Virus record (IMG/VR): IMGVR_UViG_3300027985_000918
Location: 124,001 to 188,000 of that record
Reading direction: 5' to 3' (one strand)
DNA length: 64,000 bases
Part shown: positions 14,944 to 48,210 of the stretch, one piece after another
How the letters are laid out: every line of letters begins with the position of its first letter
Position numbering within the stretch: the stretch's first letter is position 1
Program-made: the position numbers and the translations under genes
The notes under the pieces: generated by a model
The model's input: the letters and a program-made list of their open reading frames with translations, nothing else
Databases searched by the model: none
Told to the model about the DNA's origin: nothing

Positions 14944-14988
14944 AATGGAGCCTCCGCACATGTGGTTGCGGAGGCACTCTACCGGGTC

Positions 14989-17892: not shown

Positions 17893-18537
17893 TCAACCCA
17901 GGAGGGCTCCGATGTCGATACCCTCTTCCTTCTCTTGAACGACCTCACCTCGGGAGATGGCGAGCGCCATATCGAAGCGGACCTTGAAGTCGTCGTAGAT
18001 GCGGCGGGCTCGGATCTTGTCCTTCCGATCTCCCTTCAGCAGGCGCAGGAGGTAGCCAGGGTGGTAGGCCACCACCACCGGGATGCCCTCACCCGTCATG
18101 TGAGTCTGGAGGTTAGGGACCTCCTGGAGGCCCTGGACAGGGCCGTAGTGCCCGGTGCAAGACTGGGCTGCCGGACGGCCCAGGGTGACTACCACCTTGG
18201 GCTGGATGGCCTGGAGCTGGGCAGCGAGGTGCTGCCGACAGGCAGTGACCTCCTTGGTCTCGGGATCCCGGTTGTCGGGGGTCCGGCACTTGACTACGTT
18301 GGTGAGAAACACCTCACTCCGCTTGATCCCCGCATCCTTCAGGAGTCGGGTCAGAAGCTGCCCTGCGGGACCCACGAAAGGCTGGCCACTGAGGTCTTCC
18401 TCATTGCCGGGGCCCTCCCCAATGAGGACAATGCTGGCAGTTGAGGGGCCGTTCCCGGGAACGGGAAGGTGTCGCCTCTTGCATAGTTCGCAGGCTTCGC
18501 AGTCGGCAACGGTCTTGGCGATGGTTTCCAGGCTCAT
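17893..18537 (-). CDS. Uracil-DNA glycosylase family 4 (4Fe-4S)
   Basis: CEACELC, GEGPGNEED...PFVGPAG, TNVVKCR, YHPGY. Confidence 0.92.
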   Translation of the reverse strand: MSLETIAKTVADCEACELCKRRHLPVPGNGPSTASIVLIGEGPGNEEDLSGQPFVGPAGQLLTRLLKDAGIKRSEVFLTNVVKCRTPDNRDPETKEVTACRQHLAAQLQAIQPKVVVTLGRPAAQSCTGHYGPVQGLQEVPNLQTHMTGEGIPVVVAYHPGYLLRLLKGDRKDKIRARRIYDDFKVRFDMALAISRGEVVQEKEEGIDIGALLG

Positions 18538-19094
18538 GGGTCCTCGCAGAAGAAGTCATCGGGGTTGAGGCCCAGCGTCTGGGCCAAGAGGAGCAGCGCC
18601 CGCACGGTTACGAGTTGCTGCATCTCCTGTCGGGAGAGGGATGTGAGGCTATGCCCGCACACATCTGCTGTTGCGGTCTCCTGGTGGATAAAAAAAGCAG
18701 AGTTGATCCGGGTGTTCCATAGGCGAACCACGCAAATGTGGGCGTGAGGGCTCGTGACGCCCTGATCGGGATCGGGTTCGGCGTACCCCGTGGTGGCGAC
18801 GGCGATGTCCGCCTTGAACAGGCGGAGGCACCCTTCGGCCATCTCCAGAGCCACTCTTGGTGCCACGCAGTTGAAGGCAGCGGCGTGCTCCCGGTCCACC
18901 CCCAGAAGAGCCACCTTCTGATCGATATTGTAGGCGCACACCCCACCCACGAACGAATGGGAGGCCCCTGAGACAGAGCCCAGAGCCGCCTGGATGTTCC
19001 CTGCGGTCAGGGATTCTGCCGTGGCGATCGTGAACCCCTTGCTCCTTGCTTCGTTTTCGATGGCCTTCACCAGGCTCTGGATGTCTACGTCCAT
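18534..19094 (-). CDS. pncC: CinA C-terminal / PncC nicotinamide mononucleotide deamidase
   Basis: TAESLTAG, SGAS..FVGGVCAYNIDQK..LLGV, ALEMAEG, ATTGYA. Confidence 0.85.
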   Translation of the reverse strand: MDVDIQSLVKAIENEARSKGFTIATAESLTAGNIQAALGSVSGASHSFVGGVCAYNIDQKVALLGVDREHAAAFNCVAPRVALEMAEGCLRLFKADIAVATTGYAEPDPDQGVTSPHAHICVVRLWNTRINSAFFIHQETATADVCGHSLTSLSRQEMQQLVTVRALLLLAQTLGLNPDDFFCEDP

Positions 19095-19101
19095 GGGGTC
19101 T

Positions 19102-19127
19102 CTACCCTCCCGCTCAGAATCGTTACC
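19102..19127 (-). promoter_or_regulatory. Phage promoter motif upstream of pncC
   Basis: GGTAAC-N14-GGGTAG. Confidence 0.75.
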
Positions 19128-19716
19128 CTTCGAGGCTTGGGCCGCAAACCCACATGTGCCAGGTTTCACCATCTCGCAGTCCGGTCAACCTGGAAAAAGG
19201 GGCGTTGTCCGGAAAGTATCCCTTGGGGAGCCCGAGGCAATCCTCCACCACTGTAGTCAGCTCTCCCGCACTCCTTCCTTCGTCGTCCAGGAACAGGGCT
19301 TTGCAGAGCATGACCCTTTCCCCAGAGATTGTGGTTGGGCGGAAGCACACGGAATCGACCTCCATGCCAGCTTCCGTCAGCGCATCGTATACCTGGTCCG
19401 CAGTCCGACGGCGGTTCTCGTTCTCGTCCTCGATCATGTTGTGGATCAGGAGGGGGAGAGACAGCCTCGGGGGGCTCCTGTTTACTGCATGGAGGCCGAA
19501 CTCGGTCACTTTCCAGGTGGAGTGCCACGCCTGGGGGACGCTTTCTAGCATCCCCGCCGACTCCAACTCTTCAATCAAGGGAAGCACCTTTTCGTCTTCG
19601 GGGCCTCCCCGCAGCTCGAAGGTCCCCGGGTTCTTACGGATCAGATCGAGGGCGGCTTCCGAAACCTGGAATGTGATGGTCACCTGCCGACGGCTTGGAT
19701 TGAACTCTCTTTTCAT
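19123..19716 (-). CDS. Hypothetical protein
   Basis: MKREFNP start; the 5' extension in the ORF track overlaps the divergent gene. Confidence 0.55.
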   Translation of the reverse strand: MKREFNPSRRQVTITFQVSEAALDLIRKNPGTFELRGGPEDEKVLPLIEELESAGMLESVPQAWHSTWKVTEFGLHAVNRSPPRLSLPLLIHNMIEDENENRRRTADQVYDALTEAGMEVDSVCFRPTTISGERVMLCKALFLDDEGRSAGELTTVVEDCLGLPKGYFPDNAPFSRLTGLRDGETWHMWVCGPSLEG

Positions 19717-19864
19717 CGGGTATCTGTCCCTCTTTCTACTGGGGAGGGGCTTTTTCCGCCCCGTGTATCTACCGGGGTTACCCGAAATGCCTGGGTCCGT
19801 TACCAGGACGGTAGCGTCCCTATGCCCCTCCTGGAGTGCAAGCCTTAGCCTGGAGGTCACCCCG

Positions 19865-22846
19865 ATGAGCAGTCTTTTCCGCCACCTTCGGAGTCCCGGA
19901 ACCCTGAAAAGCCGACCCGCCCCTCTAGCCACCCCCACCCTCCCAGCTCCCCCGGTGAAACCCCAACGCTTGGCTTCCGTGTTCATCGCCACACACCACC
20001 GCCCAGAGCTGCTCAAGTTGTCCCTGGGGCAGTTTGCCCGAATGCCTGTCCCTCCGGGGTGGGCTGTGGAAATCCTGGTGTCCGGGGTCCCTGGAGACCC
20101 AGGGAAAGCAGTGGCTCTCCAGTTCCCGGGAGTTCAATACCTGGATAGCCCGACTGAGGTGGTCACCGACAAGATGAACCTTTGCCTCCAGGCAGCTCAG
20201 GGGGAACTGGCGATCCTAGGGGATGATGATGACATCCAACCCATGAACCGGATCTCGGAGTCTATCCGGGCCTTTGAAGAAGGGTTCGACTGGTCGGGGT
20301 CTGGGGATCTATGGTTCTACCACCCCGAGCCGGACCGCATGGTGTTCTGGTCAGGGCGGTCTTCCCGAGGGCTTGTGGGGACCAGCATGTCGTACAGCAT
20401 CACCATGCTCAGGCAGGCTGGGGGATGGCCCCGGAGGTCCAAGGGCAAAGACGGGGCATTGGCGTACCGGATGACCTCGTTGGGGGCCAAGTTCAAGGAT
20501 ATCTCCCTCACCGTCGGCCAGAGCCTGGTGGGAGTCCAGCACGGGAAGAACATCTGGCGAAGGCCCCCACTCGCCAAGGGGGCCAAAGAGACCCAGGGGA
20601 GGTTCCAGTTGGAGGGCCGGGGGACATTGGAAGAGTTGCAGGGGCAGCTCGACCCAACTGTGGTCTCAGCTTTGAAAGCGTTTCGCCAGACCCGGGCGGG
20701 GATCCCCCGAAATCAGAAGTCCCCAGACCTTCTTTGCACCGCTTCGATGGCCTCAATCCCTGGCCGAGAGGACCTGCTGAGGCAAGCTGTCCAGTCTCTC
20801 CTCCCCCAGGTGGACCACCTGAATGTCTATCTGAACGAGTATCCCGAGGTGCCCACCTTCTTGCAGGGCCACCCTCAGATCACGGTGGCCCGGAGCCAGG
20901 ATCACGGAAACAGGGGGGACGCCGGCAAGTTCTTTTGGTCGGCTGGCATCGAGGGATACCACTTCACCTGCGATGACGACATCGTGTACCCCCCGGACTA
21001 CGTCACCCGAGCGGTGAAGGCCGTTGAGCACTTCGGGCGTAGGGCGGTGCTCAGTTTCCACGGGACCATCCTCAGGGACAATCCGAAGGTCTACTACGAA
21101 GACCGGAAGGTCACCTACCACTGCCTCAGGCATGTCCCCCGAGACCATGCCGTGCATGTGGCGGGGACCGGGGTCATGGTCTACCACGCCAGCACGATCA
21201 AGGTGTCCCCAGACCTGTTCCGCCACCCCAACATGGCCGACATGTGGATGGCGAAGCACTGCCAGGAGTGCAGTATCCCTCAGGTTGTCGTTAACCACCC
21301 CGAAGGATGGATCAAAACTCACAGGGTGGTGGACACCATCTACTCCCGGTCTGCACGGTTGAAGGATGGATCGTTCATGGATTCGTCCGCCGTTCAGAAT
21401 CAGGTCGTCCGGGAAATTCCCTGGGTCCTGTTCCCGATCCCCCTTCCTCCCGCTGCCCGTTCAGGGGAGAAGAAGGTGGTTGTCACAGTGTTCACGTACA
21501 ACCGGCCCCACCAACTTCGTACCTTGCTCCAGGAGCTAAGGCTGGAAGCCCAGATGCCGGGGTTCAACGTGTCGGTACGGGTGTTCGACGATGCCTCTGA
21601 CATGGACAACTCGGAGGCCGAGAGAATCGCATCCTCGGAGGGATGGGAGTACCACAAGGCCTCTCAGAACCATGGTAAGAAGAAATTCTGGGAGTGGTAC
21701 ACCACTGCTCTACAAGGTCTCCGCAACACCCCCGCCGACTACTACGTGTTCCTGCCCGACGACGTGAGGTTGTGCTGCGGGTTCGTCAGCAGAGCCGTTC
21801 AGTCTTGGGAGGGCATTCGGGACCCCCGCAAAGCCACCTTGAACCTCATGGTGAATGAAGGCCGCCAGCACAAGGCGAACTGGACAGGGGTTCTCCCTTC
21901 CCGAAACGGCCGGGTATGGCACACCGGATGGGTGGATGGGTTGTTCATCTGCACTCGCAATACCCTGGAGGTGTTGGAGTTCCGCATCACCCCCCAGAAC
22001 AGGCCCTGGGAAACCCAGCCCCTCTTGGGGTCTGGGGTGGGGGCGGACATGAGCCGCAGGCTGCACCGGAAAGGGCACACGCTCTATCGGGTGGACCGCT
22101 CTCTGGTGGTCTCCTACCCCTTCAGCACGTCCAAGATGAACCCACAAGCCCGCAAGCAAGTCCCCCTGAAGACTATCCAGTACATCGACGAGCCCCAGAT
22201 CTCCGGTCAACGCCAGGTCGCTCGGGTAAGGGGTAGTCGGGACTACCTGATCGAGGTCATCCCTGGGGATCACGTCGGGCGTGCGTTGTCAACAGGAAAA
22301 TTCTATGAGGGGGAAATGCTGGCGGCAATCCGCCAGATGGGAGTCAAGGGGGTCTACGTGGACGTGGGGGCCTTTGTCGGCAGCCACACTACGTTCTTCG
22401 CCGGAGAGTGCCCCTCTTCGCACGTCATCGCCATCGAGCCCCAGGAGGTGGCCTACAGCCGATTGGTGGAGACCATCCGCCAGAATCGGCTGAACGCCAC
22501 TGCCATCCACGGTGCCATCCACGACGAATGGGCTAGGTGCTCCATCCAGAAACCCCCCTTGGGGAACTACGGCATGGCGAAGGTGGTGGAAGGGGGGAGG
22601 ATCCCCTGCTACGACCTGGACTCTCTTCTGGAGGGTCAGGAGATAGGGCTCATCAAGATTGATGTGGAGGGGAAAGAGATCAGTGTCCTGAAGAGTGCCC
22701 ACCAGACCATCGAGAGGTTCCGCCCCGTCATCATCACAGAGGCTCAGACGGAAGATGACCTCCGTTTGCTCAAAGAGGCACTTCCGGGATATGCCCCATC
22801 CAAGTCCTACAACTCCACCCCCACGTACATCTGGACCCCGAGCTGA
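19865..22846 (+). CDS. Multidomain glycosyltransferase (three GT-A/GT2-like domains) with C-terminal FkbM-like methyltransferase, about 993 aa
   Basis: GGAGG RBS; FIATHHRP...GDDDD; ASIPGRE...TCDDDIVYP; VFTYNRP...LPDD; VDVGAFVGSH...IEP...KIDVEG. Confidence 0.8.
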   Translation: MSSLFRHLRSPGTLKSRPAPLATPTLPAPPVKPQRLASVFIATHHRPELLKLSLGQFARMPVPPGWAVEILVSGVPGDPGKAVALQFPGVQYLDSPTEVVTDKMNLCLQAAQGELAILGDDDDIQPMNRISESIRAFEEGFDWSGSGDLWFYHPEPDRMVFWSGRSSRGLVGTSMSYSITMLRQAGGWPRRSKGKDGALAYRMTSLGAKFKDISLTVGQSLVGVQHGKNIWRRPPLAKGAKETQGRFQLEGRGTLEELQGQLDPTVVSALKAFRQTRAGIPRNQKSPDLLCTASMASIPGREDLLRQAVQSLLPQVDHLNVYLNEYPEVPTFLQGHPQITVARSQDHGNRGDAGKFFWSAGIEGYHFTCDDDIVYPPDYVTRAVKAVEHFGRRAVLSFHGTILRDNPKVYYEDRKVTYHCLRHVPRDHAVHVAGTGVMVYHASTIKVSPDLFRHPNMADMWMAKHCQECSIPQVVVNHPEGWIKTHRVVDTIYSRSARLKDGSFMDSSAVQNQVVREIPWVLFPIPLPPAARSGEKKVVVTVFTYNRPHQLRTLLQELRLEAQMPGFNVSVRVFDDASDMDNSEAERIASSEGWEYHKASQNHGKKKFWEWYTTALQGLRNTPADYYVFLPDDVRLCCGFVSRAVQSWEGIRDPRKATLNLMVNEGRQHKANWTGVLPSRNGRVWHTGWVDGLFICTRNTLEVLEFRITPQNRPWETQPLLGSGVGADMSRRLHRKGHTLYRVDRSLVVSYPFSTSKMNPQARKQVPLKTIQYIDEPQISGQRQVARVRGSRDYLIEVIPGDHVGRALSTGKFYEGEMLAAIRQMGVKGVYVDVGAFVGSHTTFFAGECPSSHVIAIEPQEVAYSRLVETIRQNRLNATAIHGAIHDEWARCSIQKPPLGNYGMAKVVEGGRIPCYDLDSLLEGQEIGLIKIDVEGKEISVLKSAHQTIERFRPVIITEAQTEDDLRLLKEALPGYAPSKSYNSTPTYIWTPS

Positions 22847-22848: not shown

Positions 22849-23619
22849 TTAGCCCCCAGAAGCGCAGCTCATCTTGTGGTGCCGGGTGACGGTTCCACAT
22901 TCCTTGCAAGGAGCCATCTCCTGGACGTCGGGACACCCCAGATCAGGGTAGTACGTCCTTCTCTCTTCGGGGTACCAGTGCCTGTTGGGGGTCCTCAGGA
23001 TGCCTCCAGCGGGCTTTGCTGCTTGCCTCCCCAGCATCCTCAGAGCCTTCCTGACGTGCTTGTCATGGAACCCCCCCGTGCTGCTGGCCGTCCTAAGGTG
23101 GACAGCCCTCAGCCTCCCAAAGTCGGAGTGATCGTCTAGGATGATGAACGGAGTTTCCAGCATCTCGGCCCGGGGCAGATGCGTCAGAAGCCACTGCTCG
23201 ATCTCCATCCCTCGTTGGATGTGGCCCGTCTGATCAGGGGTGTAGTCGAACCCCCCCCAGAGAATTCCTGTGACGGAGATGACCCTCTGGGGCTGCCGGA
23301 GGCCCCTCTGAGACAGAAGGTTCCTCAACTCCTCCAGAGTAAAGGACTTCCGCCACGTCGAGGACACAACGATCCGGGCACATGTCCGCTCGGCCAGGTC
23401 GTTGAGGTGTTTGACGTTCCTGGGATCGATGTCCGTCAGACCCTGCAAGTTGCAGTAGACATCCCGCACATTCCCGTTACGGGGCCGGCCGGCCAATTGC
23501 CACTGGTAGTAGGCCTCATCGCACTGCCGAGAGAGAGGCTTCCGAAAGGAAGACTTCCAGAACCGACGATTGTTCAGGACGCCGTCAATGTCCAGGAACA
23601 GGATGGGATCAGGTTGCAT
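22849..23619 (-). CDS. HAD-family 'Swiss Army knife RNA repair-like' phosphatase
   Basis: LFLDIDGVLN, IVVSSTWR, RGMEIEQWL, FIILDD. Confidence 0.8.
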   Translation of the reverse strand: MQPDPILFLDIDGVLNNRRFWKSSFRKPLSRQCDEAYYQWQLAGRPRNGNVRDVYCNLQGLTDIDPRNVKHLNDLAERTCARIVVSSTWRKSFTLEELRNLLSQRGLRQPQRVISVTGILWGGFDYTPDQTGHIQRGMEIEQWLLTHLPRAEMLETPFIILDDHSDFGRLRAVHLRTASSTGGFHDKHVRKALRMLGRQAAKPAGGILRTPNRHWYPEERRTYYPDLGCPDVQEMAPCKECGTVTRHHKMSCASGG

Positions 23620-24281: not shown

Positions 24282-25166
24282 TTACCCCAGATTCACGATG
24301 ATGCCGTCGTTGCTCACGACGACCGTGAACTCGTCTCCCGGATTCCAGGTGTACCCGTTGTCCGTGTCGGGGTAGAAGGCGATCCGGCCGGAGCCCTGCC
24401 AGATCGTGTACTCCTTGCCTCCGTTGTCCTGGAACGACACCAGGGCGTGGGGGCGGCCGAGATCATCGTCGAATGCCACGTAGACCTTCGTGTTGCCGTC
24501 GATGATGTGGCCAAGGGAGCAGTAGGCGTCCACCACCTTACGAGGGAGGTAGAGACGGTTGTCCGAGCCCACCTTGACCGTCGGAAGCCCGATGCTCACG
24601 CTGGCAGGGGTCCGGGGGGCCGGAGGCTGAGCAGGCCACGGGCTGGCATCCCGGTTCGCCACATCGCTCTGGGTCTGGCCGGGGACCGGGACGTAGACCT
24701 CGAAGTCGTGGGCCAGTGCCGAGGCGGCATCCGGGCCGTACACGAACACGTCTCTGTTGGCCGGGGTCCGGTCGGGGAACAGTCCCTGAGTCTGGCGGTA
24801 GACCTGGACGGGCATGGCGCCGAGTCCGTTGCCGTCGTCGTACAGACCGAGGTTCCCCTGGAAGTAGTTGTCCCGGATGTACTCCCCCACCTGGGAGACT
24901 GCGAACCGGAGGTTCGGGTTGACCATGCGGAGGAACCGAGCGACTTCACCGGACGAGAAGCACTCGTTGTTGGCGATGAGGTGGCGGCACACGTTCACGG
25001 AGGCGTCACGCCAGCTATCCCCACCTTCCTTGACAGCCTCGTCCACCGTCCGGAAATCGGAGACGGTCGGGACGGAGTCCGCCGGGCTCGGGGCGAGCGG
25101 CTGGCTGGGCTGTCCGGTGGCGGAGGTCTGAGCAGCGGCGTTGGGATCGAAGTTCAACATGTTCAC
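24282..25166 (-). CDS. Hypothetical protein, possible DNA-binding (helical N-part; AbrB-like VKVGSDNRLYLP C-part)
   Basis: Own promoter motif; domain guesses by eye. Confidence 0.6.
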   Translation of the reverse strand: MNMLNFDPNAAAQTSATGQPSQPLAPSPADSVPTVSDFRTVDEAVKEGGDSWRDASVNVCRHLIANNECFSSGEVARFLRMVNPNLRFAVSQVGEYIRDNYFQGNLGLYDDGNGLGAMPVQVYRQTQGLFPDRTPANRDVFVYGPDAASALAHDFEVYVPVPGQTQSDVANRDASPWPAQPPAPRTPASVSIGLPTVKVGSDNRLYLPRKVVDAYCSLGHIIDGNTKVYVAFDDDLGRPHALVSFQDNGGKEYTIWQGSGRIAFYPDTDNGYTWNPGDEFTVVVSNDGIIVNLG

Positions 25167-25180: not shown

Positions 25181-25206
25181 CTACCCGAGAAGCTGTTGCG
25201 GTTACC
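25181..25206 (-). promoter_or_regulatory. Phage promoter motif
   Basis: GGTAAC-N14-GGGTAG. Confidence 0.75.
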
Positions 25207-25783
25207 CGATACCGTGAAGATGCCGGAAGGCACCCAAATCCATACCTTGGAGCTGCTGGTAAGCGCTGACGATCTGCTCGACGGTCAAGGCTTCCCTCTC
25301 CACGAGATAGGCCAACACATCCGTGGCGTCGAAGGGATCCAGCTTATTGATGCGATCCCCGAAAGTCTGCTCCCTCATCACGCTGTTCTGGAGGAACAGC
25401 TCCACGAATCTCAGGATCTTACGCTCCCTCAGGTCCAGGTGACCTACCTCCCCGTAGGTGAGGTCAAAAGGGTCGTCGCCGTAACTACTGCCGGCATGGT
25501 AGAAGGGTTCAGTCACCCCCGCTAGACTCACCTGGTTCCAGTGGACGGCGTCAGATCTGAAAGTTCTCCGAGATACTCGGAACAAAAAGCCCGCCGCTAC
25601 CGTAGGTGAGCCAATCAGACCGGAACCGTTCTTGCGGTAGAGAGGGTTAGAGAACCCTTTACAAATTTCGTAAGTACCCTCTCGGAGGGCGGCATAACCC
25701 TCATTGATGGCGTCTACCTGGGTGCTGCTGTCGTAGGCAGGGATGCGTTCCATAGCTACCACCCTAAAACCTTCGTTGTTCAC
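25202..25783 (-). CDS. Hypothetical protein
   Basis: Promoter motif at 25789-25814; start may be 25753. Confidence 0.6.
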   Translation of the reverse strand: MNNEGFRVVAMERIPAYDSSTQVDAINEGYAALREGTYEICKGFSNPLYRKNGSGLIGSPTVAAGFLFRVSRRTFRSDAVHWNQVSLAGVTEPFYHAGSSYGDDPFDLTYGEVGHLDLRERKILRFVELFLQNSVMREQTFGDRINKLDPFDATDVLAYLVEREALTVEQIVSAYQQLQGMDLGAFRHLHGIG

Positions 25784-25853: not shown

Positions 25854-27683
25854 TCAGGTGAGCCAGTCGAACTCGACCACGTAGCGGATTCGCTGGTAGT
25901 CGGGGGAGAAGATGATGTGCTCATCGTTCTCTAGCCCGTGCCCGTTATCTCCACCGACCCCGAAGACCGAGTCGGACTGGACCTGGGCCCCGCCACACTG
26001 ACAGGTCGTGGCCCCACCCCGGTTACCGTAGGAGCGGTAGGTGCCCTGCATGTTGTTCGGGCGGTGGCACTTGACACAGCTCTGGGGAGGGCTGCTCCAG
26101 GAGCCCGTCGAAGGCGCCCGGTAGGCATGCCCCATGATCATGTCCGTGACGAACATGAAACATCCCCGGTTCTGGACCCCGCCCCCACCCCCGCCGCTGT
26201 AGTAGCCTCGCCCCGTGTAGCCGTAGCTCTTCCGCCAGTCGGTGGCGAAGTAGATACCGTGTCCGAAATTGGCCCCGGTGATCTGGGCTCCCGGCAAGCT
26301 CTGAGGGAGCCGGAAATTAGTCCCCATGATGGGGGCGATGTTGACCGGGCGGGTGCCGTGGATGCTCAGGATGACGTTCGCCTGGGCGTACTCATCGGAG
26401 AGACCCGCCAGGTCGGTCCGGCGAGGTTGGAGATTGCCCCGGAGGGAGAACTTACCCTGGACACGGGCACCAACCCTTTGAACTTCCGCCAGGAAGCGGG
26501 CGTCTCGATCGGGACGTTCCACAGCAAACAGAGAACGGACCTTGGGAGACTTGGATCCCATGTAACCGTGCCGGTTGTTGCTCATGTGGACGAAAGCATC
26601 CCAGAGCCACTTCCCCTCGGTCCCGTTCGGATCGATCCAGCGGAGCTGAGCGTTCAGCAGGGAATCCGGATCGATGGACTGGACCGGAGTTGTCGTCGTG
26701 AAGTCCTCGGTCGTCAGAGCGGTCTCGAAGGCGTCGAGGTCCGCCTGGAGGGACAGGAGGTTGCCTGAGTTCAGGATGGCCTGCTCGTCGGTCCATCCCG
26801 TCCGGGGGATAGGACGGGGAACCAGACTGTTGACCGTGGTCGAGATGGTCCGCAGAGCGGAGTCCTTGACCTGGGCGGCCACCAGGGCATCGTTGTCCCG
26901 GAAGTTGGTGCCCACGGCGGCCAGTCGCTGAAGGGCCGCCGGGATGAGCTGGTCTCGAACCTTCGAGATGGCCCGCATGGTCGGAGTCACACCGCTGGCC
27001 TGGGACAGGGAGCGGGTGTACGTCTGGGTGCCGCCGACGAGGTCCCTGGCGAGTTGGACGACCTCGGGCTGCCACGACTTCAGAGACTTGACCACAGCGG
27101 GGGCGGCCGTCTTGACCGGCGTGGGAGCAGGCATGGCGACCCCGGACCCGTCTTTGACGGTCAGCACGTCGGGGAGCCCCTTCTCACGAGTTGCTAGGTC
27201 CTGGATGAGATAGCCGTCTTTGCCAGCCTTGGCACACCACAGGTCGATGCCCCCGATGCTCTTGCACTCCAGACGGGCCAGGTTCTTGTCTCGGACCTGC
27301 CCAGCGAACCAGGAACGGGCCTGGTCGAGGGTGGCCCCCACGGTGAACTGGAAATCCTGGTAGGCCCCCGTCCAGGAGCCGTGCTCCCAGCTCTTCCCCG
27401 GACGGGAACGACCCCACTCGAAGTAGGCGTGGTACTGGCCCGTCTTCTTGTCCCGCACCACCCCGGCGTGGTAGCCCTTGGCGTTGTTCGCTTCCCCGAA
27501 CTGGTTGACGCACACCATGTCCACGAGCCCGATGTCGGGGTTGGGCATGGAACCGTTCAGGTACCCATTTTCGTCGATGGCGGGCTTTCCGACGTACTCG
27601 AAGTCGTCAGGAGAGCAGCCTGCGGGGAGCTGGCGCTTGCCCAACTTGTCGTTGGTCCCAGGTTTCTTGACGGCGATGGTCAT
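25854..27683 (-). CDS. PARP1-like ADP-ribosyltransferase (WGR + PARP regulatory + catalytic domains)
   Basis: NNAKGY...YFEWGRS (WGR); PEVVQL...NSLVPR (regulatory); IHGTR, FGHGIYFA..RKSYGY, NDEHIIF (H-Y-E triad). Confidence 0.88.
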   Translation of the reverse strand: MTIAVKKPGTNDKLGKRQLPAGCSPDDFEYVGKPAIDENGYLNGSMPNPDIGLVDMVCVNQFGEANNAKGYHAGVVRDKKTGQYHAYFEWGRSRPGKSWEHGSWTGAYQDFQFTVGATLDQARSWFAGQVRDKNLARLECKSIGGIDLWCAKAGKDGYLIQDLATREKGLPDVLTVKDGSGVAMPAPTPVKTAAPAVVKSLKSWQPEVVQLARDLVGGTQTYTRSLSQASGVTPTMRAISKVRDQLIPAALQRLAAVGTNFRDNDALVAAQVKDSALRTISTTVNSLVPRPIPRTGWTDEQAILNSGNLLSLQADLDAFETALTTEDFTTTTPVQSIDPDSLLNAQLRWIDPNGTEGKWLWDAFVHMSNNRHGYMGSKSPKVRSLFAVERPDRDARFLAEVQRVGARVQGKFSLRGNLQPRRTDLAGLSDEYAQANVILSIHGTRPVNIAPIMGTNFRLPQSLPGAQITGANFGHGIYFATDWRKSYGYTGRGYYSGGGGGGVQNRGCFMFVTDMIMGHAYRAPSTGSWSSPPQSCVKCHRPNNMQGTYRSYGNRGGATTCQCGGAQVQSDSVFGVGGDNGHGLENDEHIIFSPDYQRIRYVVEFDWLT

Positions 27684-30810: not shown

Positions 30811-31599
30811 TCAGAGGGTCTTGGCGGCGTTCACGTACTCCGCATCGGTGACCGAATCCTCCTCGATCCTTTGCCTCAAGGCGAGGAGGGAGGCCATCGG
30901 CTGAGGCTCGACGGGAATAGCGGCCACCATGTCGAATTCGGCGGCGAACTCCGACAGGGCATCCTGTTCCAGAACTTCGTGCTCGACCTCGGACATCACC
31001 CAGGCGTTGCCGGAGTTGGCCTCGGCGGCGACTCGGGTGCGGCCCTGGGCGTTGGTGATCTGCTCGTTGAGGCTCTTCTCCAGGTCGGAGAGCCCCTGCC
31101 CGTCCGGGTTGAACGTCAGCTCGGAAGCCATCTCCGAGAGCTTGGCCTGGGCGTTTGCCATTTCCGCCTGGGAGATCTTGCCCCTGACCGTTTCGATCTT
31201 CGTCATCGACTGCTTGACGAAGATGTCCCTCTGACGGGTGAGCTGCTGGAACTGCTCTTCGGCGGCCTGGAGCTGGCGCTCGTTCTCGGTGATGTTGGCC
31301 TGTACCATCTTGCGTTGGCCGGCGAGTTGGCCGGCAAGGGTGGCTTTGCCAGCCTTCATGAGGGCCTTGATTCGGATTACGAGTTGGGCTTCTTTGGCCC
31401 GATCGTCCTGAAGCTGAAGCTCCAGGCGGCGGCGGAAGGCATCCTGTTTCGCCAGATTCTGGTTGAACGTCGCCTGGTTCTTCTGAAACTCCTGGATGTG
31501 CGCATCCAGAAGGGCCTTCGGGTTCGACTTCTCGATCCCGCCGATGAACAGGCCGAGGAACCCTCGGATGAGTCGCATGATGCGTCGGAAGAAACTCAT
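30811..31599 (-). CDS. pspA: PspA/IM30 (ESCRT-III-like) family protein
   Basis: Amphipathic MSFFRRIMRLIRG, ExxNPKALL, long coiled coil, LAGQL, AQAKL...F. Confidence 0.8.
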   Translation of the reverse strand: MSFFRRIMRLIRGFLGLFIGGIEKSNPKALLDAHIQEFQKNQATFNQNLAKQDAFRRRLELQLQDDRAKEAQLVIRIKALMKAGKATLAGQLAGQRKMVQANITENERQLQAAEEQFQQLTRQRDIFVKQSMTKIETVRGKISQAEMANAQAKLSEMASELTFNPDGQGLSDLEKSLNEQITNAQGRTRVAAEANSGNAWVMSEVEHEVLEQDALSEFAAEFDMVAAIPVEPQPMASLLALRQRIEEDSVTDAEYVNAAKTL

Positions 31600-34385: not shown

Positions 34386-34402
34386 TACTTGACGGAACGC
34401 AG

Positions 34403-34477
34403 TGCGCCCGGGGGGACTCGAACCCCCGCATCACCAAGTTTTAGAGACTCGGGCTCTAACCTCTGAGCTACGGGCGC
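34403..34477 (-). tRNA. tRNA with anticodon CUA (amber suppressor type); CCA not encoded
   Basis: Acceptor GCGCCCG/CGGGCGC, D stem GCTC/GAGC, anticodon stem CGAGT/ACTTG with loop CT-CTA-AA (anticodon 34444-34442), T stem GGGGG/CCCCC with TTCGAGT, discriminator A. Confidence 0.9.
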
Positions 34478-34656: not shown

Positions 34657-35085
34657 TCAGGTGGGCTCTAGGCGGGGGAGTAGCACCACTCCCCCCCAGT
34701 ACCTCTTCATGGTGCGGAGGGCCGCCTCAGACAGAGGTTTCGCCACGTAGCTGTTCGCTCCCCCCTGATACCCTCGAAGGATGTCCGTATCGGACTTGCT
34801 GGCCGTCATGACGACCACGGGGATATGGCTCAACAGAGGGTCCTTGCGGATCTGGGCAAGAGCCTCATGTCCCCCCATCCTTGGCATCTTCAAATCCAGT
34901 AGGATCATGTCGGGCAGGGTTTTAGAGGGGTCCCTCAGCCTCTCCAGCAATTCCACTCCATCCTTGACCCTCTCCAGCTTGTTCGGACTCTGGCACTCGT
35001 CGAAGCTGTCAGCTATGAGCATCCAGTCTTCATCGTCATCTTCGGCAAAAAGAAGCAGCGGGTTGCGTTTTGAAGCTGTGAGCAT
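34657..35085 (-). CDS. Single-domain response regulator (Rcp1-like)
   Basis: FAEDD, PDMILLDLKMP, VVMTAS, GANSYVAKP. Confidence 0.9.
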   Translation of the reverse strand: MLTASKRNPLLLFAEDDDEDWMLIADSFDECQSPNKLERVKDGVELLERLRDPSKTLPDMILLDLKMPRMGGHEALAQIRKDPLLSHIPVVVMTASKSDTDILRGYQGGANSYVAKPLSEAALRTMKRYWGGVVLLPRLEPT

Positions 35086-35089
35086 GGGA

Positions 35090-36253
35090 TCAATCCACCT
35101 TTCTCTTTGGGAGGCCAACGTGGAACGTGGCCCCTTCTCCGGGCATAGCCTCGCAGTCGATCCAGCCTTGGTGACGATCTAGAATCTTCTTCACCAGTGC
35201 CAGACCGATGCCCGTGCCCGGATAGTCAAACCGGGTGTGAAGCCTCTCGAAGAGCTGGAACACCTTGTCTTTGAATGCCATGTCGAACCCGATCCCGTTG
35301 TCCGACACTGAAATCACCCAGTCCTCGTCGGTCTCCTGGGCGGTGAACTGGATCAAGGGCACCCTGTCGGGGTGCCGGAACTTGATGCTGTTGCTGATCA
35401 GGTTCTGAAGCACGGTCCGCATCTGGTAGCGGTCTGCCCAGACGGTAGGTAGGTCCTGTGCCAAAACCCGGGCATTGGCCTGTTCGATGGGGATGGCCAG
35501 GTCTTCCAGAATGCTGCGGAGGATCTTGTTGAGGTCCACTGCCTCAAAGGGGTCTTCCAGCCTCCCCACCCGGCTGTAGGACAGGAGGTCATCCATCAAC
35601 GACTGCATGCGCTCCGTGGCGTTCAACATCACGTCGATATATGACTGCCCCTTGTCGTCCAGCACTTCGGCGTACTTCTCCTTGAGCCTTTGGCCGAAGG
35701 CCCTCACTTTGAGCAGGGGTTCTCGGAGGTCATGGCTGGCAGCGTAAGCGAACTGACGTAGCTCATCGTTGGACAGTTGAAGCTCTTCCGTCCGGGCCCT
35801 CACTAGAGCTTCCAAATCCTGGACATTCCCTCGATGCTCCGTCACATCCCGTACCAGGACTAGGCACTCGTCCTCATGACTGCGGGCGAACCGAGCCTCG
35901 AACACGGAATTAGGATGATTGGGGACCTTGAACTCCCAGGTGATTACCTCTCCAGTGTCCATCGCTTGGAGGGCTTTATGCAGGGTGGCGTTTGCGAATT
36001 CCGGCCTGCCTACATCGAGAACCCGCCGGCCGATAACGTTCTGGTGATCCGCCAAGGGGGAGGCATTCAGCCCCGGCGCCATGTCGGCATAGAACCCTTC
36101 TCGGGTGATGATGCAGATCAGGTCGGGAGAGGCAATGCGGAGGGCATCCAGACGACCGGGATCATTGACTCGGCCGTAAGAGGGATCCTGCTGGCACCGA
36201 TTCAGAAACGGACAGCTCTTGCCCTGCAGGCACCAGTCGGGAGAACTGGACAT
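35090..36253 (-). CDS. PAS-domain sensor histidine kinase (Cph1/BphP-type transmitter)
   Basis: FAYAASHDLREPL (H box), QNLISNSIKF (N), SDNGIGF (G1), FQLFERLH (F), GTGIGLA (G2). Confidence 0.92.
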   Translation of the reverse strand: MSSSPDWCLQGKSCPFLNRCQQDPSYGRVNDPGRLDALRIASPDLICIITREGFYADMAPGLNASPLADHQNVIGRRVLDVGRPEFANATLHKALQAMDTGEVITWEFKVPNHPNSVFEARFARSHEDECLVLVRDVTEHRGNVQDLEALVRARTEELQLSNDELRQFAYAASHDLREPLLKVRAFGQRLKEKYAEVLDDKGQSYIDVMLNATERMQSLMDDLLSYSRVGRLEDPFEAVDLNKILRSILEDLAIPIEQANARVLAQDLPTVWADRYQMRTVLQNLISNSIKFRHPDRVPLIQFTAQETDEDWVISVSDNGIGFDMAFKDKVFQLFERLHTRFDYPGTGIGLALVKKILDRHQGWIDCEAMPGEGATFHVGLPKRKVD

Positions 36254-36257
36254 GCCC

Positions 36258-37013
36258 TCACCCTACACTCTTGAGCGCCCGGATGGCTTCGACATCCACC
36301 ACCTGGACCAGGAGGGTTAGAAGAACCACGATGGTGATCAAACCCAGGAACAACATAACCGAAGCGACAGGGTGCAATGTGACCCATTCGGCCGTGTCCC
36401 GGACCCTATCCCAAGGGGTCTTCTTGATATTCTTGAGGATCTCTTCCTTTTGCTGGTCCAGCTTGACATCCAAGCGGCCGAACCCCTCTTTGAACTCGGA
36501 CCTCAGCTCACTTAGCTGAAAGGCAGTGCTGGTCTGAGCGGACGCACCCTCTCGGGTAAGGGATACTAGCTCCTGAACCTGGAGACCCACCCCTCCTGAT
36601 TCCGAGCCGTTTCGGATCTGCCTCTCATGTAGCCCGATGGCGTACAGGCAGGTCCGCTCCAGGAGGTCAGACGAGAAAGTCCCCTTCTCCAAGAATTCCG
36701 CCACCCCCGCCTCCAGAGCTTCATCCTGGAGACGGCGGTCCCCGTGGCTGGTGATAAGCACCACGGGGATGTGAAAATGCAGTCGCACCATCTCGGACAG
36801 CAGATCCATTCCGGACTGGTCGGGGAGACGATAGTCAAGGAGCATCACGTCGTAGCGGTGCTTCTTGACCTTCTCCAGGGCGGCGGCGGCGGTTTCGACG
36901 GCATCCACGCCAAACTTGGCCCGCTTGGAGTCATCGAGCAGGTCGATGACCAGCCGGGCGTCGTCCCGGTCGTCCTCAACCAACAGCACTCGAACAGTTG
37001 CGGGCGGGGGCAT
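36258..37013 (-). CDS. Receiver (REC) domain fused to coiled coil and C-terminal TM anchor
   Basis: LLVEDD, LLDYRLP, LITS, FLEKG; C-terminal VASVMLFLGLITIVVLLTLLVQV. Confidence 0.85.
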   Translation of the reverse strand: MPPPATVRVLLVEDDRDDARLVIDLLDDSKRAKFGVDAVETAAAALEKVKKHRYDVMLLDYRLPDQSGMDLLSEMVRLHFHIPVVLITSHGDRRLQDEALEAGVAEFLEKGTFSSDLLERTCLYAIGLHERQIRNGSESGGVGLQVQELVSLTREGASAQTSTAFQLSELRSEFKEGFGRLDVKLDQQKEEILKNIKKTPWDRVRDTAEWVTLHPVASVMLFLGLITIVVLLTLLVQVVDVEAIRALKSVG

Positions 37014-37160
37014 GTCTCGAACCTCCAAAAACAGCAGGACCCTCCTAAGTTGGGGCCGCTACCACGTATGGATTATCGAGCATCTACCATTCTCGGGGCC
37101 GACTTCACGATAGTGGTCCCTAGTCCCCCATCTTCTGGCCAGTGTTGTGATCCCTCACAG

Positions 37161-47739: not shown

Positions 47740-48210
47740 TCATGGAAAGGGGGACTTGTGGGATGTCCGGAAGTGGCGAGACCACAGCTCCCGGACAACT
47801 TCTGGGGGAGCATCCGTGGCGAGGCCCTGAGGCGAACAGCCCCTCCCACCCCCGTACCCGTACACATGGTACTTGCCCCAACGACCGAGGAACACACTTG
47901 CGTCCCACCAGAAATCCCAGAGGGGAGTCCCCTCAGAGTTCAGCTCCCCCGTGTCATAGTAGCAGAGTTCCACTCCACTCTTCCCCAACTCCCGAAACGG
48001 CTCAGGGGTGTCACCCCAGGAATCGGGATCGATATACACAGCCCCCTCATCCTGCATGAGCTGCCAATCTCCGGGCCAGCAGTCGTTGCCGGAGGCGGAC
48101 TTGGCGACTGCAGGGGCCATCCTGGTGAGCTGCCCCAGCAACTCACCCACCCGGGCTTCGGCCCTCTGACGGGTGGTGCGGGGTTCAGTTCCGAAAGTGA
48201 ACGTCTTCAT
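47740..48210 (-). CDS. Hypothetical protein
   Basis: ATGA-coupled to upstream gene. Confidence 0.6.
   Translation of the reverse strand: MKTFTFGTEPRTTRQRAEARVGELLGQLTRMAPAVAKSASGNDCWPGDWQLMQDEGAVYIDPDSWGDTPEPFRELGKSGVELCYYDTGELNSEGTPLWDFWWDASVFLGRWGKYHVYGYGGGRGCSPQGLATDAPPEVVRELWSRHFRTSHKSPFP

What the first reader, a model, noticed from the sequence alone, without database searches (positions are those of the whole stretch)
25854..27683. Phage-encoded PARP1-like enzyme (WGR-regulatory-catalytic) with an intact H-Y-E triad and a zinc-ribbon insert
Seen: the domain order and motifs mirror the C-terminal half of eukaryotic PARP1/2 (WGR, autoinhibitory helical domain, HGT/GIYFA/KSxxY/NDE). An unusual CVKC...CQC insert interrupts the catalytic domain. 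Known: this architecture is DNA-break activated and rare in bacteria, whereas typical phage ARTs (T4 Alt/Mod) are R-S-E type. Inference: a DNA-end-sensing poly- or mono-ADP-ribosylation device for repair, NAD depletion or counter-defence.
Basis: partly seen in the sequence, partly recalled or inferred. Interest (0 to 1): 0.8.

Follow-up and report, generated by a model that had tools for sequence, protein, structure and literature searches.

The report
Huge-phage PARP with conserved partner gene
A 402-kb bacteriophage genome encodes an intact relative of the human DNA-break sensors PARP1/2 (WGR, helical regulatory and catalytic domains). It belongs to a large, unannotated huge-phage family and is usually followed by an uncharacterised partner gene of DNA-binding type; phage PARPs were already noted in surveys, so this is a new variant, not a new kind.

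Summary
Window 25854-27683 (-) is an intact 609-aa gene with a good ribosome-binding site. It scores the Pfam PARP catalytic domain above threshold. Its AlphaFold model (pLDDT 82) aligns end to end with human PARP1 and PARP2 WGR-HD-ART chains bound to DNA breaks (Foldseek E about 1e-17). H442, Y478 and E588, and R92 of the WGR motif, are conserved in 81 of 81 relatives (W90 in 78, G91 in 80).

The Cys4 insert (CVKC...CQC) is real but specific to one lineage: 11 of the 120 closest homologues have it.

The contig is an IMG/VR viral genome of 402,383 bp. The family has at least 358 protein clusters, many on contigs of 200-618 kb. Among cellular genomes it appeared almost only in Nannocystaceae myxobacteria.

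New here: an unannotated gene of 250-300 aa (window 24282-25160, -) lies downstream on the same strand in 32 of 46 loci. It is often translationally coupled, and a sister PARP family has it too. It models as a winged-helix domain plus an AbrB/MazE-like domain.

No ADP-ribose eraser and no known defence system was found.

The most likely function is DNA-nick or DNA-end-activated ADP-ribosylation in phage DNA repair or replication. This is inferred, not shown. Phage PARPs are already noted in surveys, so I rate it a new variant of a known kind.

The parts
25854..27683 (-). PARP-like gene, 609 aa plus TGA stop. The start is ATG 27683, with the GAGGA Shine-Dalgarno at 27696-27692.
   Evidence: ORF; start context; identical JGI gene call; Pfam PARP; full-length fold match to PARP1/2.
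27144..27626 (-). WGR-type domain (about residues 20-180), with the invariant N/D66-x-x-K69-x-Y71 and W90-G91-R92 motifs.
   Evidence: Pfam WGR in 22/40 homologues; PARP3 WGR is the sole PDB hit of the N-terminal profile; beta-rich model with one long helix; conservation.
26649..27068 (-). Helical domain (about residues 206-345, six or seven helices), equivalent to the PARP regulatory/autoinhibitory HD. A low-confidence Pro/Ala-rich linker (about residues 181-205) precedes it.
   Evidence: Secondary structure of the model; collinear profile alignment to the PARP1 HD (stretch 1); Foldseek alignment lengths and TM scores to PARP1 HD+ART chains. Pfam PARP_reg was not detected.
25857..26648 (-). 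ADP-ribosyltransferase (PARP catalytic) domain, about residues 346-609. Catalytic codons: H442 (26358-26360), Y478 (26250-26252), E588 (25920-25922).
   Evidence: Pfam PF00644 at residues 433-605; PDB PARP1/2/3/4 and tankyrase hits; H/Y/E conserved 81/81.
25980..26084 (-). Lineage-specific Cys4 insert (about residues 534-568; C536, C539, C563, C565). It sits just before the conserved 'DSVFGVGG' strand of the ART domain and is a putative zinc knuckle or ribbon.
   Evidence: Alignment A1 shows it in 5 of 40 members. A regex scan finds it in 11 of 120 homologues with conserved Cys spacing. The model is confident at both Cys pairs and poor in the loop, residues 548-554.
25202..25783 (-). Intervening ORF (193 aa; JGI aa) between the PARP and the partner. 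No detectable relatives; not conserved across loci.
   Evidence: No Pfam, PHROG, NCBIfam or PADLOC hits; absent from the conserved clusters.
24282..25160 (-). Conserved partner gene (292 aa). ATG at 25160, GAGGAAGG Shine-Dalgarno at 25173-25166. N-terminal winged-helix-like domain and C-terminal AbrB/MazE/MraZ-like domain.
   Evidence: Co-occurs downstream on the same strand in 32/46 loci. Reverse look-ups 3/3. Also present in the sister PARP family. Model pLDDT 85.6. Atlas structural neighbours. No Pfam, PHROG, NCBIfam, PADLOC or PDB match.

Best explanation
The gene encodes an active PARP-family (H-Y-E) ADP-ribosyltransferase. It has the same three-part sensor-switch-enzyme layout as eukaryotic PARP1, PARP2 and PARP3 and as the DNA-dependent bacterial PARPs, and it is carried by a 402-kb huge phage.

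Proposed mechanism, by analogy with PARP1-3 (inferred, not shown):
1. The WGR domain binds a nick or a DNA end.
2. This destabilises the helical domain that otherwise blocks the NAD+ site.
3. The ART domain then transfers ADP-ribose from NAD+ onto itself and onto nearby targets. Sequence cannot tell whether it makes chains or single units.

In the phage this most likely marks or manages breaks and repair intermediates in replicating phage DNA. It would work together with the co-encoded base-excision and nick-sealing enzymes and with the conserved downstream DNA-binding-type partner protein, which could be a co-factor, a target or a regulator.

The Cys4 insert of this lineage is probably a small zinc-stabilised, basic surface loop that adds a nucleic-acid or protein contact.
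For: SHOWN
- Pfam PARP above its threshold.
- A confident model, pLDDT 82 and pTM 0.82. Its best PDB matches are PARP1 and PARP2 WGR-HD-ART chains in complex with DNA breaks, E 7e-18, about 610 aligned columns.
- The family profile aligns collinearly to both the HD and the ART of PARP1.
- WGR is supported by Pfam in 22/40 relatives and by the PARP3 WGR hit.
- H442/Y478/E588, K485, Y489 and R92 are conserved in 81/81 sequences, across two deep clades and contig GC from 27 to 72%; W90 in 78/81. This argues for a conserved catalytic and DNA-sensing function.

CONTEXT
- The window encodes UDG, a T4 endonuclease V-type pyrimidine-dimer glycosylase, RNase H, an RNase T-type exonuclease, NAD-dependent ligase with BRCT, thymidylate and deoxynucleoside kinases, and CinA/PncC.
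- NAD-dependent ligase lies within 10 kb of the PARP in 6 of 52 related loci, and within 3 kb in L052, L055 and L056.
- The partner is downstream in 32/46 loci, often with a 4-bp start/stop overlap.

LITERATURE
- Herpetosiphon PARP needs DNA for activity, and bacterial PARPs share the WGR-helical-catalytic layout (PMC8120803, PMC5966428).
Against: - There is no biochemical evidence of any kind.
- No PARG, macrodomain, ARH or NADAR eraser was found, either among about 48 scanned window ORFs or in the precomputed annotations of 9 loci. The other 338 kb of the genome were not visible.
- A phage enzyme that consumes NAD+ is counter-intuitive, because hosts use NAD+ depletion as a defence.
- The family lacks roughly 30 residues that PARP1 has between its 'GLGK' and 'LLYNEY' segments. 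H-Y-E is necessary but not sufficient for chain elongation, so it may be a mono-transferase.
- Apart from the partner, the neighbourhood is poorly conserved, and the ligase link is weak (6/52).
- Pfam PARP_reg does not score. The sequence match to the HD alone is marginal (i-E 0.041).
Confidence: 0.6

Rival explanations
1. Host-takeover or counter-defence transferase. [quoted passage not shown]
For: ARTs are widespread phage takeover tools, and jumbo-phage PARPs have been proposed to act like them with longer chains (PMC7824862; PMC9503650). Several relatives sit beside conflict genes: a phage-borne type I-E CRISPR-Cas in L004, small GmrSD_N proteins in L001 and L054, and an Apyc1-like MBL in L055.
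Against: The complete DNA-break-sensing and autoinhibition apparatus (WGR plus HD) is conserved in 81/81 members. That is not needed for a plain takeover ART. The same operon is resident in Nannocystaceae chromosomes, including a 6.97-Mb contig, where takeover makes no sense. The window's context is repair and nucleotide metabolism, not head or packaging genes.
Confidence: 0.15
2. Toxin-antitoxin-like or abortive module. The PARP is an NAD+-depleting or DNA-modifying toxin, and the MazE/AbrB-like partner holds it in check. The module would be used for superinfection exclusion by the phage, or as a defence in the myxobacterial chromosome.
For: The partner's C-terminal domain resembles AbrB/MazE/SpoVT antitoxin-type DNA-binding domains (Atlas TM 0.55-0.67). 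In Nannocystaceae and in one viral locus the two genes are adjacent or overlap by 4 bp. No eraser enzyme is present. In myxobacteria the module sits in a variable context.
Against: There is no match to any PADLOC defence model for the PARP, the partner or their neighbours. In phages the two genes are separated by 0.5-5 kb and by unrelated ORFs, which is unusual for a toxin-antitoxin pair. The partner is large, has two domains and lies downstream. A third of the loci have no detectable partner. The residues invariant in the partner are not kept between its two subfamilies. This argues against an enzymatic partner, but not against an antitoxin.
Confidence: 0.15
3. DNA rather than protein is the substrate. 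The enzyme ADP-ribosylates phosphorylated DNA ends or nicks, either of the phage genome (to cap or protect them) or of host or competitor DNA (to block it).
For: The WGR places the active site at DNA termini in the PARP1 and PARP2 complexes that are the best structural matches. DNA ADP-ribosylation by ART enzymes such as DarT is an established conflict mechanism (PMC9503650). No protein-ADP-ribose eraser was found. PARP1-3 can modify DNA ends in vitro (my own knowledge, not checked here).
Against: No direct evidence. The family keeps the PARP-type catalytic glutamate and acceptor-side Lys/Tyr that are typical of protein-modifying and chain-forming PARPs. The conserved protein partner suggests a protein-level interaction.
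Confidence: 0.1

Closest known systems
Eukaryotic DNA-dependent PARPs (human PARP1, PARP2, PARP3): the WGR-HD-ART module
   Same: Same domain order and fold. The best PDB matches are PARP1 and PARP2 WGR-HD-ART chains on DNA breaks. It has the H-Y-E triad, the 'HG[ST]', 'G.G.Y[FL]A' and 'KS..Y' motifs, the WGR core motif, and an 'L..[IL]S..[FV]....[IV]P[HR]' motif in the HD.
   Different: Only 14-17% identity. There are no zinc fingers, BRCT or N-terminal extension. Pfam's WGR and PARP_reg models do not score on the window's own sequence. About 30 residues between PARP1's 'GLGK' and 'LLYNEY' are missing. A Cys4 insert sits in the ART of this lineage. It is linked to a prokaryote- and phage-specific partner gene.
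Bacterial PARPs (Herpetosiphon aurantiacus PARP, Clostridioides difficile CD160 PARP and relatives; PMC5966428, PMC8120803)
   Same: WGR, then a helical domain, then a catalytic domain, with the helical domain often invisible to Pfam. This is exactly the 'WGR-PARP_cat with a modelled helical domain' class described there. They are DNA-dependent and capable of PARylation where tested.
   Different: Those studies list 72 sequences from six bacterial phyla and find companion PARG genes. This family is centred on huge phages (at least 358 clusters), with cellular copies found only in Nannocystaceae/Myxococcota. It has no PARG nearby and has its own partner gene.
Viral 'PART/PARP' ARTs noted in surveys (jumbo-phage example BBA65562.1 in PMC7824862; PMC9503650; PARP listed among NAD-using genes of gut jumbo phages in PMC11662467)
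   Same: Phage-encoded H-Y-E PARP-family transferases, predicted possibly to make poly-ADP-ribose. BFVD holds full-length structural matches from 'Bacteriophage sp.' (A0A8D9PE85) and Bodo saltans virus.
   Different: In the passages read, the surveys do not describe the WGR-HD architecture, this family's size, the Cys4 insert, the myxobacterial copies or the partner gene. The only hit in 50,697 deposited phage genomes is one unannotated 595-kb huge phage, LR756511.
Sister huge-phage PARP family (L053-like, about 515 aa)
   Same: Also found on contigs of 280-536 kb. It carries the same partner gene downstream (L053, L055, L056), is often next to NAD-dependent ligase, and often has a second short PARP-domain gene nearby.
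   Different: It scores all three Pfam models, WGR, PARP_reg and PARP. It is only 28% identical to the window's protein, and only over the ART. It has no Cys4 insert.
Phage T4 Alt / ModA / ModB
   Same: Phage-encoded NAD+-dependent ADP-ribosyltransferases.
   Different: They belong to the R-S-E clade, are mono-transferases, have no WGR or HD, and are head-packaged or early takeover enzymes. Neither Pfam nor PHROG matched the window's protein to them.
HPF1 (accessory factor of human PARP1/2): a functional analogy for the partner only, from my own knowledge
   Same: A separate protein that works with a WGR-HD-ART PARP at DNA breaks.
   Different: No sequence or fold relationship was detected. 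The partner looks like a winged helix plus an AbrB-type DNA binder. This is an idea to test, not a finding.

Membership tests
PARP / ARTD family (H-Y-E clade of ADP-ribosyltransferases) | PARP catalytic domain recognised by the curated model PF00644 above its gathering score | tested here: met
   39.5 bits against a cut-off of 26.7, E=5.6e-10, residues 433-605. 40/40 relatives also match.
PARP / ARTD family (H-Y-E clade of ADP-ribosyltransferases) | Catalytic His-Tyr-Glu triad in register with PARP1/2 | tested here: met
   H442, Y478 and E588 align with the PARP1/PARP2 triad positions. They are conserved 81/81.
DNA-dependent PARP subgroup (PARP1-3 and bacterial WGR-PARPs) | N-terminal WGR domain | tested here: met
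   Not scored by Pfam on the window's sequence. PF05406 hits 22/40 relatives, best E 2.6e-6. The PARP3 WGR is the sole PDB hit of the N-terminal profile (E 0.14). Full-length Foldseek alignment to WGR-containing chains. R92 conserved 81/81, W90 78/81, G91 80/81.
DNA-dependent PARP subgroup (PARP1-3 and bacterial WGR-PARPs) | Helical regulatory domain (PARP_reg/HD) between the WGR and the ART | tested here: met
   The Pfam PF02877 model is not matched. The model has six or seven helices at residues 206-345. The family profile aligns collinearly with the PARP1 HD (i-E 0.041, followed by the ART stretch at 5.6e-6). PARP1 HD+ART chains align over about 445 columns, TM 0.65-0.70. The feature is met at fold level and is marginal by sequence.
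DNA-dependent PARP subgroup (PARP1-3 and bacterial WGR-PARPs) | Catalytic activation by DNA breaks | not testable with these tools
   Needs an enzyme assay with and without nicked or broken DNA.
Poly(ADP-ribose) polymerases in the strict sense | Formation of ADP-ribose chains (elongation or branching) | not testable with these tools
   H-Y-E is necessary but not sufficient. The family lacks a segment of about 30 residues that PARP1 has on the acceptor side. Needs PAR detection in vitro.
Bacterial PARP-PARG systems | A PARG, macrodomain or ARH eraser encoded with the PARP | tested here: not met
   None among about 48 window ORFs scanned with Pfam. None in the precomputed Pfam annotation within 7-10 kb in 9 loci. 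The rest of the 402-kb genome was not seen.
Zinc ribbon / zinc knuckle | Two Cys pairs (CxxC ... CxC) conserved among carriers | tested here: met
   All 11 carriers keep the four Cys with a 15-24-residue variable basic spacer.
Zinc ribbon / zinc knuckle | Tetrahedral metal-binding geometry or a beta-hairpin 'ribbon' fold | not testable with these tools
pLDDT falls below 50 at residues 548-554. Needs metal analysis or an experimental structure.
T4 Alt/Mod-type (R-S-E) phage ARTs | Arg-Ser-Glu catalytic motif and Alt/Mod family membership | tested here: not met
   The only family hits are PARP (Pfam) and phrog_23333. The triad is H-Y-E.
Known anti-phage defence systems (PADLOC-DB 2.0) | A match of the PARP, the partner or adjacent genes to any defence-system model | tested here: not met
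   No hits for 8 proteins from the window and from the myxobacterial and viral loci.
Huge (jumbo) phage genome | A viral contig over 200 kb with phage hallmark genes | tested here: met
   The contig is IMG/VR UViG_3300027985_000918, 402,383 bp. The window has a T4 gp9/10-like baseplate domain and PHROG matches for the ligase and the polymerase exonuclease. Its closest deposited relative is the 595-kb phage LR756511. Capsid and terminase genes lie outside the window and were not seen.

The most novel reading that the evidence does not exclude
The PARP and its downstream partner form an ancient, previously undescribed two-protein DNA-break signalling module. It is shared by several deep lineages of huge phages and by Nannocystaceae myxobacteria. 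In this reading the partner (a winged helix plus an AbrB-like domain) is an obligatory co-factor or the dedicated substrate of the PARP. Functionally that would be a prokaryotic or viral counterpart of the PARP-accessory-factor or PARP-chromatin-protein pairs of eukaryotes. It would also make huge phages a major reservoir, and possibly a vehicle, of PARP1-type break sensing outside eukaryotes.
Probability: 0.3. Interest if true: 0.75.

Novelty: new variant of a known kind. Interest (0 to 1): 0.55.

Why it matters
PARP1-type break sensing is a pillar of eukaryotic genome maintenance and a drug target. Outside eukaryotes it has been treated as a sporadic curiosity, with about 72 bacterial sequences and two enzymes assayed.

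This analysis shows that the complete WGR-HD-ART module is a common, strongly conserved gene of huge phages. There are two families, with at least 358 and at least 240 protein clusters, on genomes of 200-618 kb and from 27 to 65% GC.

It also shows that the module travels with a specific, unannotated partner gene. That gives three things:
- a tractable minimal system for studying how WGR and HD gate a PARP;
- a candidate new PARP accessory protein;
- cultivable organisms (Enhygromyxa salina, Plesiocystis pacifica) in which the operon can be knocked out.

It also raises the question of why a virus would carry an NAD+-consuming enzyme when hosts use NAD+ depletion as a defence.

Tried and rejected
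1. NAD+ salvage next to the PARP. The CTP_transf-like plus kinase ORF at 48207-49571 looked like NadR, but NCBIfam shows a CoaD-CoaE (CoA synthesis) fusion. Rejected.

2. Stop-codon recoding. The window has a genuine tRNA with a CUA anticodon. However, TAG ends 9 of 35 confident genes. The one candidate read-through pair (13963-16008, minus strand) is two genes, because the second has its own ATG at 14943 and a GGAGG. The in-frame TGA in L019 lies upstream of the true start.

3. A PAR eraser. None was found (see the membership test).

4. Known defence system. No PADLOC hit.

5. Identity of the partner by sequence. There was no Pfam, PHROG, NCBIfam or PDB hit. Foldseek against the PDB with the whole model found nothing below E 0.25. 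Only the ESM Atlas structure search gave leads.

6. Partner in the remaining clade-A loci. Two other conserved downstream ORF families there are unrelated to it (hhalign probability below 1%). One of them has metallophosphoesterase-like motifs.

7. Conserved Nannocystaceae neighbours. Eight ORFs had no Pfam hit.

8. Promoter and terminator scan around the gene array. Nothing above chance.

9. A PARP paralogue in the window. None.

10. A near-identical DNA match in deposited phages. None.

11. A literature search for Plesiocystis or Enhygromyxa PARP. Nothing relevant.

12. The 1.84-billion-protein representative search was not used, because the questions at hand were answered by cheaper tools.
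Full report
**1. The observation**

The minus strand carries one uninterrupted ORF from 27698 to 25854.
The alternative GTG at 27698 lies inside that Shine-Dalgarno.
- JGI's own gene call gives the same 609-aa product.
C563-Q-C565.
- The gene's third-position GC content is 0.83, the second highest among the window's ORFs and well above the window's 0.61 overall GC. This fits a real coding region.

**2. What the protein is**

Catalytic domain:
- Pfam recognises the PARP catalytic domain above its curated threshold (E 5.6e-10, residues 433-605).
- PHROGs gives one family, annotated 'polymerase'.
- The best sequence matches in the PDB are the PARP2 and PARP1 catalytic domains.

Pfam finds neither WGR nor PARP_reg in this sequence, so I tested those two claims separately.

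The family:
- A search of 5.8 billion proteins found at least 358 relatives. The top 120 are all full length, with E below 1e-150.
- In a 40-member alignment, the EWGR motif and the H, Y and E residues are invariant.

WGR:
- Pfam WGR scores in 22 of 40 members, best E 2.6e-6.
- A profile of the N-terminal 160-180 residues has a single PDB hit, the PARP3 WGR domain. It aligns at the canonical 'NNKFY...WGRVG' core. At E 0.14 this is weak on its own.

Helical domain:
- The whole-family profile gives two collinear stretches on PARP1 catalytic-fragment chains.
- One covers the helical domain and the start of the ART: 'L.dISKlVaalVPR' against PARP1 'LdLSNrFytlIPH', i-E 0.041.
- The other covers the ART core, i-E 5.6e-6.

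Structure:
- The AlphaFold2 model built on the alignment is confident (pLDDT 82.2, pTM 0.82).
- It shows a beta-rich N-terminal domain, a disordered Pro/Ala linker, six or seven helices, and then an alpha/beta domain.
- Foldseek against the PDB ranks first the human PARP1 WGR-HD-ART chains bound to a DNA double-strand break (7s6h, 7s6m, 8g0h, 4dqy, 4opx) and PARP2 on a bridged break (6x0l). These have E 7e-18 to 1e-14 and about 610 aligned columns.
- PARP1 HD+ART fragments of about 350 residues align over about 445 columns with TM 0.65-0.70. That is more than the ART alone could give.
- In the viral structure library, the best full-length matches are annotated NAD+ ADP-ribosyltransferases of Bodo saltans virus and of 'Bacteriophage sp.'.

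The WGR-HD-ART reading is therefore supported at both fold and sequence-profile level.

Conservation:
- Across 81 family members, H442, Y478, E588, K485, Y489 and R92 are conserved in all. W90 is conserved in 78.
- These members include a deeply divergent viral clade at 28-35% identity.
- This argues for an active enzyme whose DNA-sensing domain is under selection.

**3. The Cys-rich insert**

- In the 40-member alignment, only five sequences have the roughly 34-residue insert. Among the 120 best homologues, 11 have it.
- All carriers keep CxxC[H/S/A/N][K/R][P/E] and CxC. The spacer of 15-24 residues is variable and rich in Arg, Lys, Gly, Ser and Tyr.
- The insert lies immediately before the conserved 'DSVFGVGG' strand, which aligns with PARP1 'HSVKGLGK'.
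- On a tree built without the insert columns, the carriers fall into two clades that are not sisters: P0001/2/3, and P0005/8. That implies either several losses or a transfer by recombination.
- The model is confident at both Cys pairs and poor in the loop.
- Calling it a zinc knuckle or ribbon is a reasonable inference from the Cys4 pattern, but it is not shown.
- The whole family also lacks about 30 residues that PARP1 has between 'GLGK' and 'LLYNEY'.

**4. Is it a phage gene?**

- The contig is JGI Ga0259481_10000009, which is IMG/VR UViG_3300027985_000918, 402,383 bp.
- 31 IMG/VR loci carry the family, on contigs up to 618 kb and with locus GC from 27 to 65%.
- The only hit among 50,697 deposited phage genomes is the unannotated 595-kb uncultured phage LR756511 (33% identity).
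- The window itself has a T4 gp9/10-like baseplate domain and many ORFans. It also has the eclectic gene content typical of huge phages:
  - a response-regulator, histidine-kinase, response-regulator set
  - PspA
  - a CoaD-CoaE fusion
  - a large glycosyltransferase-methyltransferase
  - an amber-suppressor tRNA

**5. Cellular relatives**

- Among one genome per species for 185,579 species, the pattern scan found 14 loci. Thirteen are full-length, and all of those are in Myxococcota, mostly Nannocystaceae.
- They include Plesiocystis pacifica SIR-1, three Enhygromyxa salina strains, and Nannocystaceae ST9 on a 6.97-Mb contig.
- Their locus GC (65-72%) matches that of their hosts.
- On a midpoint-rooted tree, the myxobacterial sequences form two groups nested within viral and metagenomic diversity. 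Without an outgroup, the direction of transfer is not established.
- The scan used two conserved peptide patterns, so more distant cellular relatives could have been missed.

**6. A conserved partner gene**

Clustering all ORFs in the flanks of 46 loci showed one family besides the PARP and its antisense shadows. It is a 250-300-aa ORF, always downstream of the PARP and on the same strand.

- In the window it is 24282-25160 (-), 292 aa, with GAGGAAGG 5 nt before its ATG. One unrelated 193-aa ORF separates it from the PARP.
- In Nannocystaceae and in viral locus L012 it is adjacent, and its start often overlaps the PARP stop codon by 4 bp.
- In the other phage loci of the window's clade it lies 0.5-5 kb downstream.
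- In the divergent viral clade, a conserved downstream gene in 8 loci is homologous to it (hhalign probability 98%, E 1.8e-13 over 211 columns). This gives 32 of 46 loci in total.

Starting instead from partner proteins found independently (at least 100 relatives, all 'hypothetical', no Pfam domain), 3 of 3 look-ups showed a PARP gene 1.3-2 kb upstream on the same strand.

One of those PARPs (L053) belongs to a different family of about 515 aa.
- That family scores all three Pfam models (WGR, PARP_reg, PARP). It has at least 240 members on contigs up to 536 kb.
- It is only 28% identical to the window's enzyme, and only over the ART.
- In three further loci of that family, the partner is present in two.

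What the partner looks like:
- Its model is confident (pLDDT 85.6), but as a whole it has no significant PDB neighbour.
- Atlas structure comparison places the C-terminal ~100 residues with AbrB/MazE/SpoVT and MraZ domains (TM 0.55-0.67). This agrees with its repeated 'RLxIPR' and 'GRVxF' motifs.
- The N-terminal domain is placed with winged-helix domains: MarR, PadR, BlaI, Fur and Cdc6-WHD (TM 0.4-0.5). These are leads, not proofs.
- The shortest versions (about 130 aa, in a Myxococcota MAG clade) keep only the N-terminal domain.
- The residues invariant in one subfamily are not kept in the other. This fits a binding protein better than an enzyme.

**7. Context and function**

The window is rich in enzymes that make or seal nicks:
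- UDG (17893-18537)
- a T4 endonuclease V-type pyrimidine-dimer glycosylase (13496-13966)
- RNase H (1152-1847)
- an RNase T-type exonuclease (59512-60591)
- an NAD-dependent ligase with BRCT (7374-9425)
- thymidylate and deoxynucleoside kinases
- CinA/PncC

An NAD-dependent ligase lies within 10 kb of the PARP in 6 of 52 loci. It is within 3 kb in L052, L055 and L056.

What was not found:
- No PARG, macrodomain or ARH (and the precomputed annotations of nine loci).
- No PADLOC defence model matched.

The best-supported reading is a DNA-nick or DNA-end-activated ADP-ribosyltransferase that works on or around replicating and repairing phage DNA together with its partner. The domain architecture and its conservation are shown. 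DNA activation, chain length, targets and biological role are inferred.

The rivals cannot be excluded. They are a takeover or counter-defence ART, a toxin-antitoxin-like or abortive module, and DNA-end ADP-ribosylation.

**8. Comparison with what is known, and novelty**

- Bacterial PARPs with WGR, helical and catalytic domains are known. Pfam often fails to see their helical domain, and two have been assayed (PMC5966428, PMC8120803).
- Phage and jumbo-phage PARP-family ARTs have been noted in comparative surveys (PMC7824862, PMC9503650, PMC11662467).
- The enzyme is therefore not a new kind.

What I did not find in the passages read or in the searches made:
- the size of these huge-phage families and their strong conservation;
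- the full WGR-HD architecture in phages;
- the restriction of cellular copies to Nannocystaceae;
- the Cys4 insert;
- the partner gene.

I rate it a new variant of a known kind, of moderate interest. The partner module is the part most worth following.

**9. Limits**

- Only the window and 7-10 kb flanks of the related loci were visible.
- The tree is unrooted and was built with a quick search.
- The Atlas structural neighbours are predicted models with modest TM scores.

Noticed in passing
window 34402-34477 (-): A genuine tRNA (Rfam 60.8 bits) with a CUA anticodon, that is, an amber suppressor (ARAGORN labels it tRNA-Pyl). TAG still ends 9 of 35 confident genes in the window, and no convincing in-frame TAG gene was found here. 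If recoding occurs, it would have to be elsewhere in the 402-kb genome, for example in late genes.
   Followed up: partly
window 34657-37028 (-): A phage-encoded two-component set: response regulator, PAS-HisKA-HATPase histidine kinase (35090-36253), and a second response regulator. A Rho_N-like fragment lies beyond it.
   Followed up: no
window 48207-49571 (-): A fusion of pantetheine-phosphate adenylyltransferase (CoaD-like) and dephospho-CoA kinase (CoaE-like), the last two steps of CoA synthesis in one phage protein. Both NCBIfam scores are below the equivalog cut-offs.
   Followed up: partly
window 13496-13966 (+), 17893-18537 (-), 7374-9425 (-), 1152-1847 (-), 59512-60591 (+): A set of DNA-repair genes: a T4 endonuclease V-type pyrimidine-dimer glycosylase, uracil-DNA glycosylase, NAD-dependent DNA ligase with BRCT, RNase H, and an RNase T-type exonuclease. 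Together they could form a phage-borne base-excision and nick-repair route.
   Followed up: partly
window 18534-19094 (-), and L056: A CinA/PncC-type (NMN deamidase family) gene lies near the PARP region in the window and again in a locus of the sister PARP family. It may be a link to NAD+ metabolism.
   Followed up: no
window 40284-41096 (+), and L055 2999-3778: A metallo-beta-lactamase-fold protein with a sub-threshold match to the anti-Pycsar nuclease Apyc1. The counterpart in locus L055 carries a precomputed Apyc1 hit. This is a candidate cyclic-nucleotide-degrading counter-defence gene.
   Followed up: no
window 19046-22846 (+) and 22849-23619 (-): A large glycosyltransferase-2 plus FkbM-methyltransferase protein (1266 aa from the first start; JGI aa), next to a HAD_SAK_2 ('Swiss army knife' RNA-repair type) phosphatase. 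A similar GT/MTase pair recurs in L056.
   Followed up: no
L005 14895-15845; L054 15628-16533; L055 14264-14944: A second, short (226-316 aa) PARP-catalytic-domain-only gene lies 3-6 kb downstream of the long PARP in three huge-phage loci. In L055 the partner gene directly follows this short PARP. The window has no such paralogue.
   Followed up: partly
L004 706-7864: A complete type I-E CRISPR-Cas effector set (Cas3, Cse1, Cse2, Cas7, Cas5, Cas6e) lies just upstream of the PARP homologue. The locus shown is a 26.8-kb JGI contig, but the same protein also occurs on a 444-kb contig.
   Followed up: no
L039, L041, L043, L045, L048 (Nannocystaceae genomes): In Plesiocystis, Enhygromyxa and Nannocystaceae ST9, the PARP-partner operon is flanked by two further ORFs conserved only among myxobacteria: about 500 aa upstream and about 390 aa downstream. 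Neither has a Pfam match, so this may be a four-gene island.
   Followed up: partly
L001/L002 4423-5046 and L054 6362-6940: A small (about 190-225 aa) protein containing only the GmrSD_N (DUF262) domain lies just upstream of the PARP, both in the closest relative of the window's gene and in a sister-family locus. It is not in that position in the window.
   Followed up: no
window 41093-42754 (-), 30811-31599 (-), 55838-56419 (-), 60537-62030 (+): Other unusual cargo: a DUF5661 plus ferritin-like protein, a PspA/IM30 homologue, a protein with a C-terminal cold-shock domain, and a DUF4942 plus DNA-methyltransferase-like protein.
   Followed up: no
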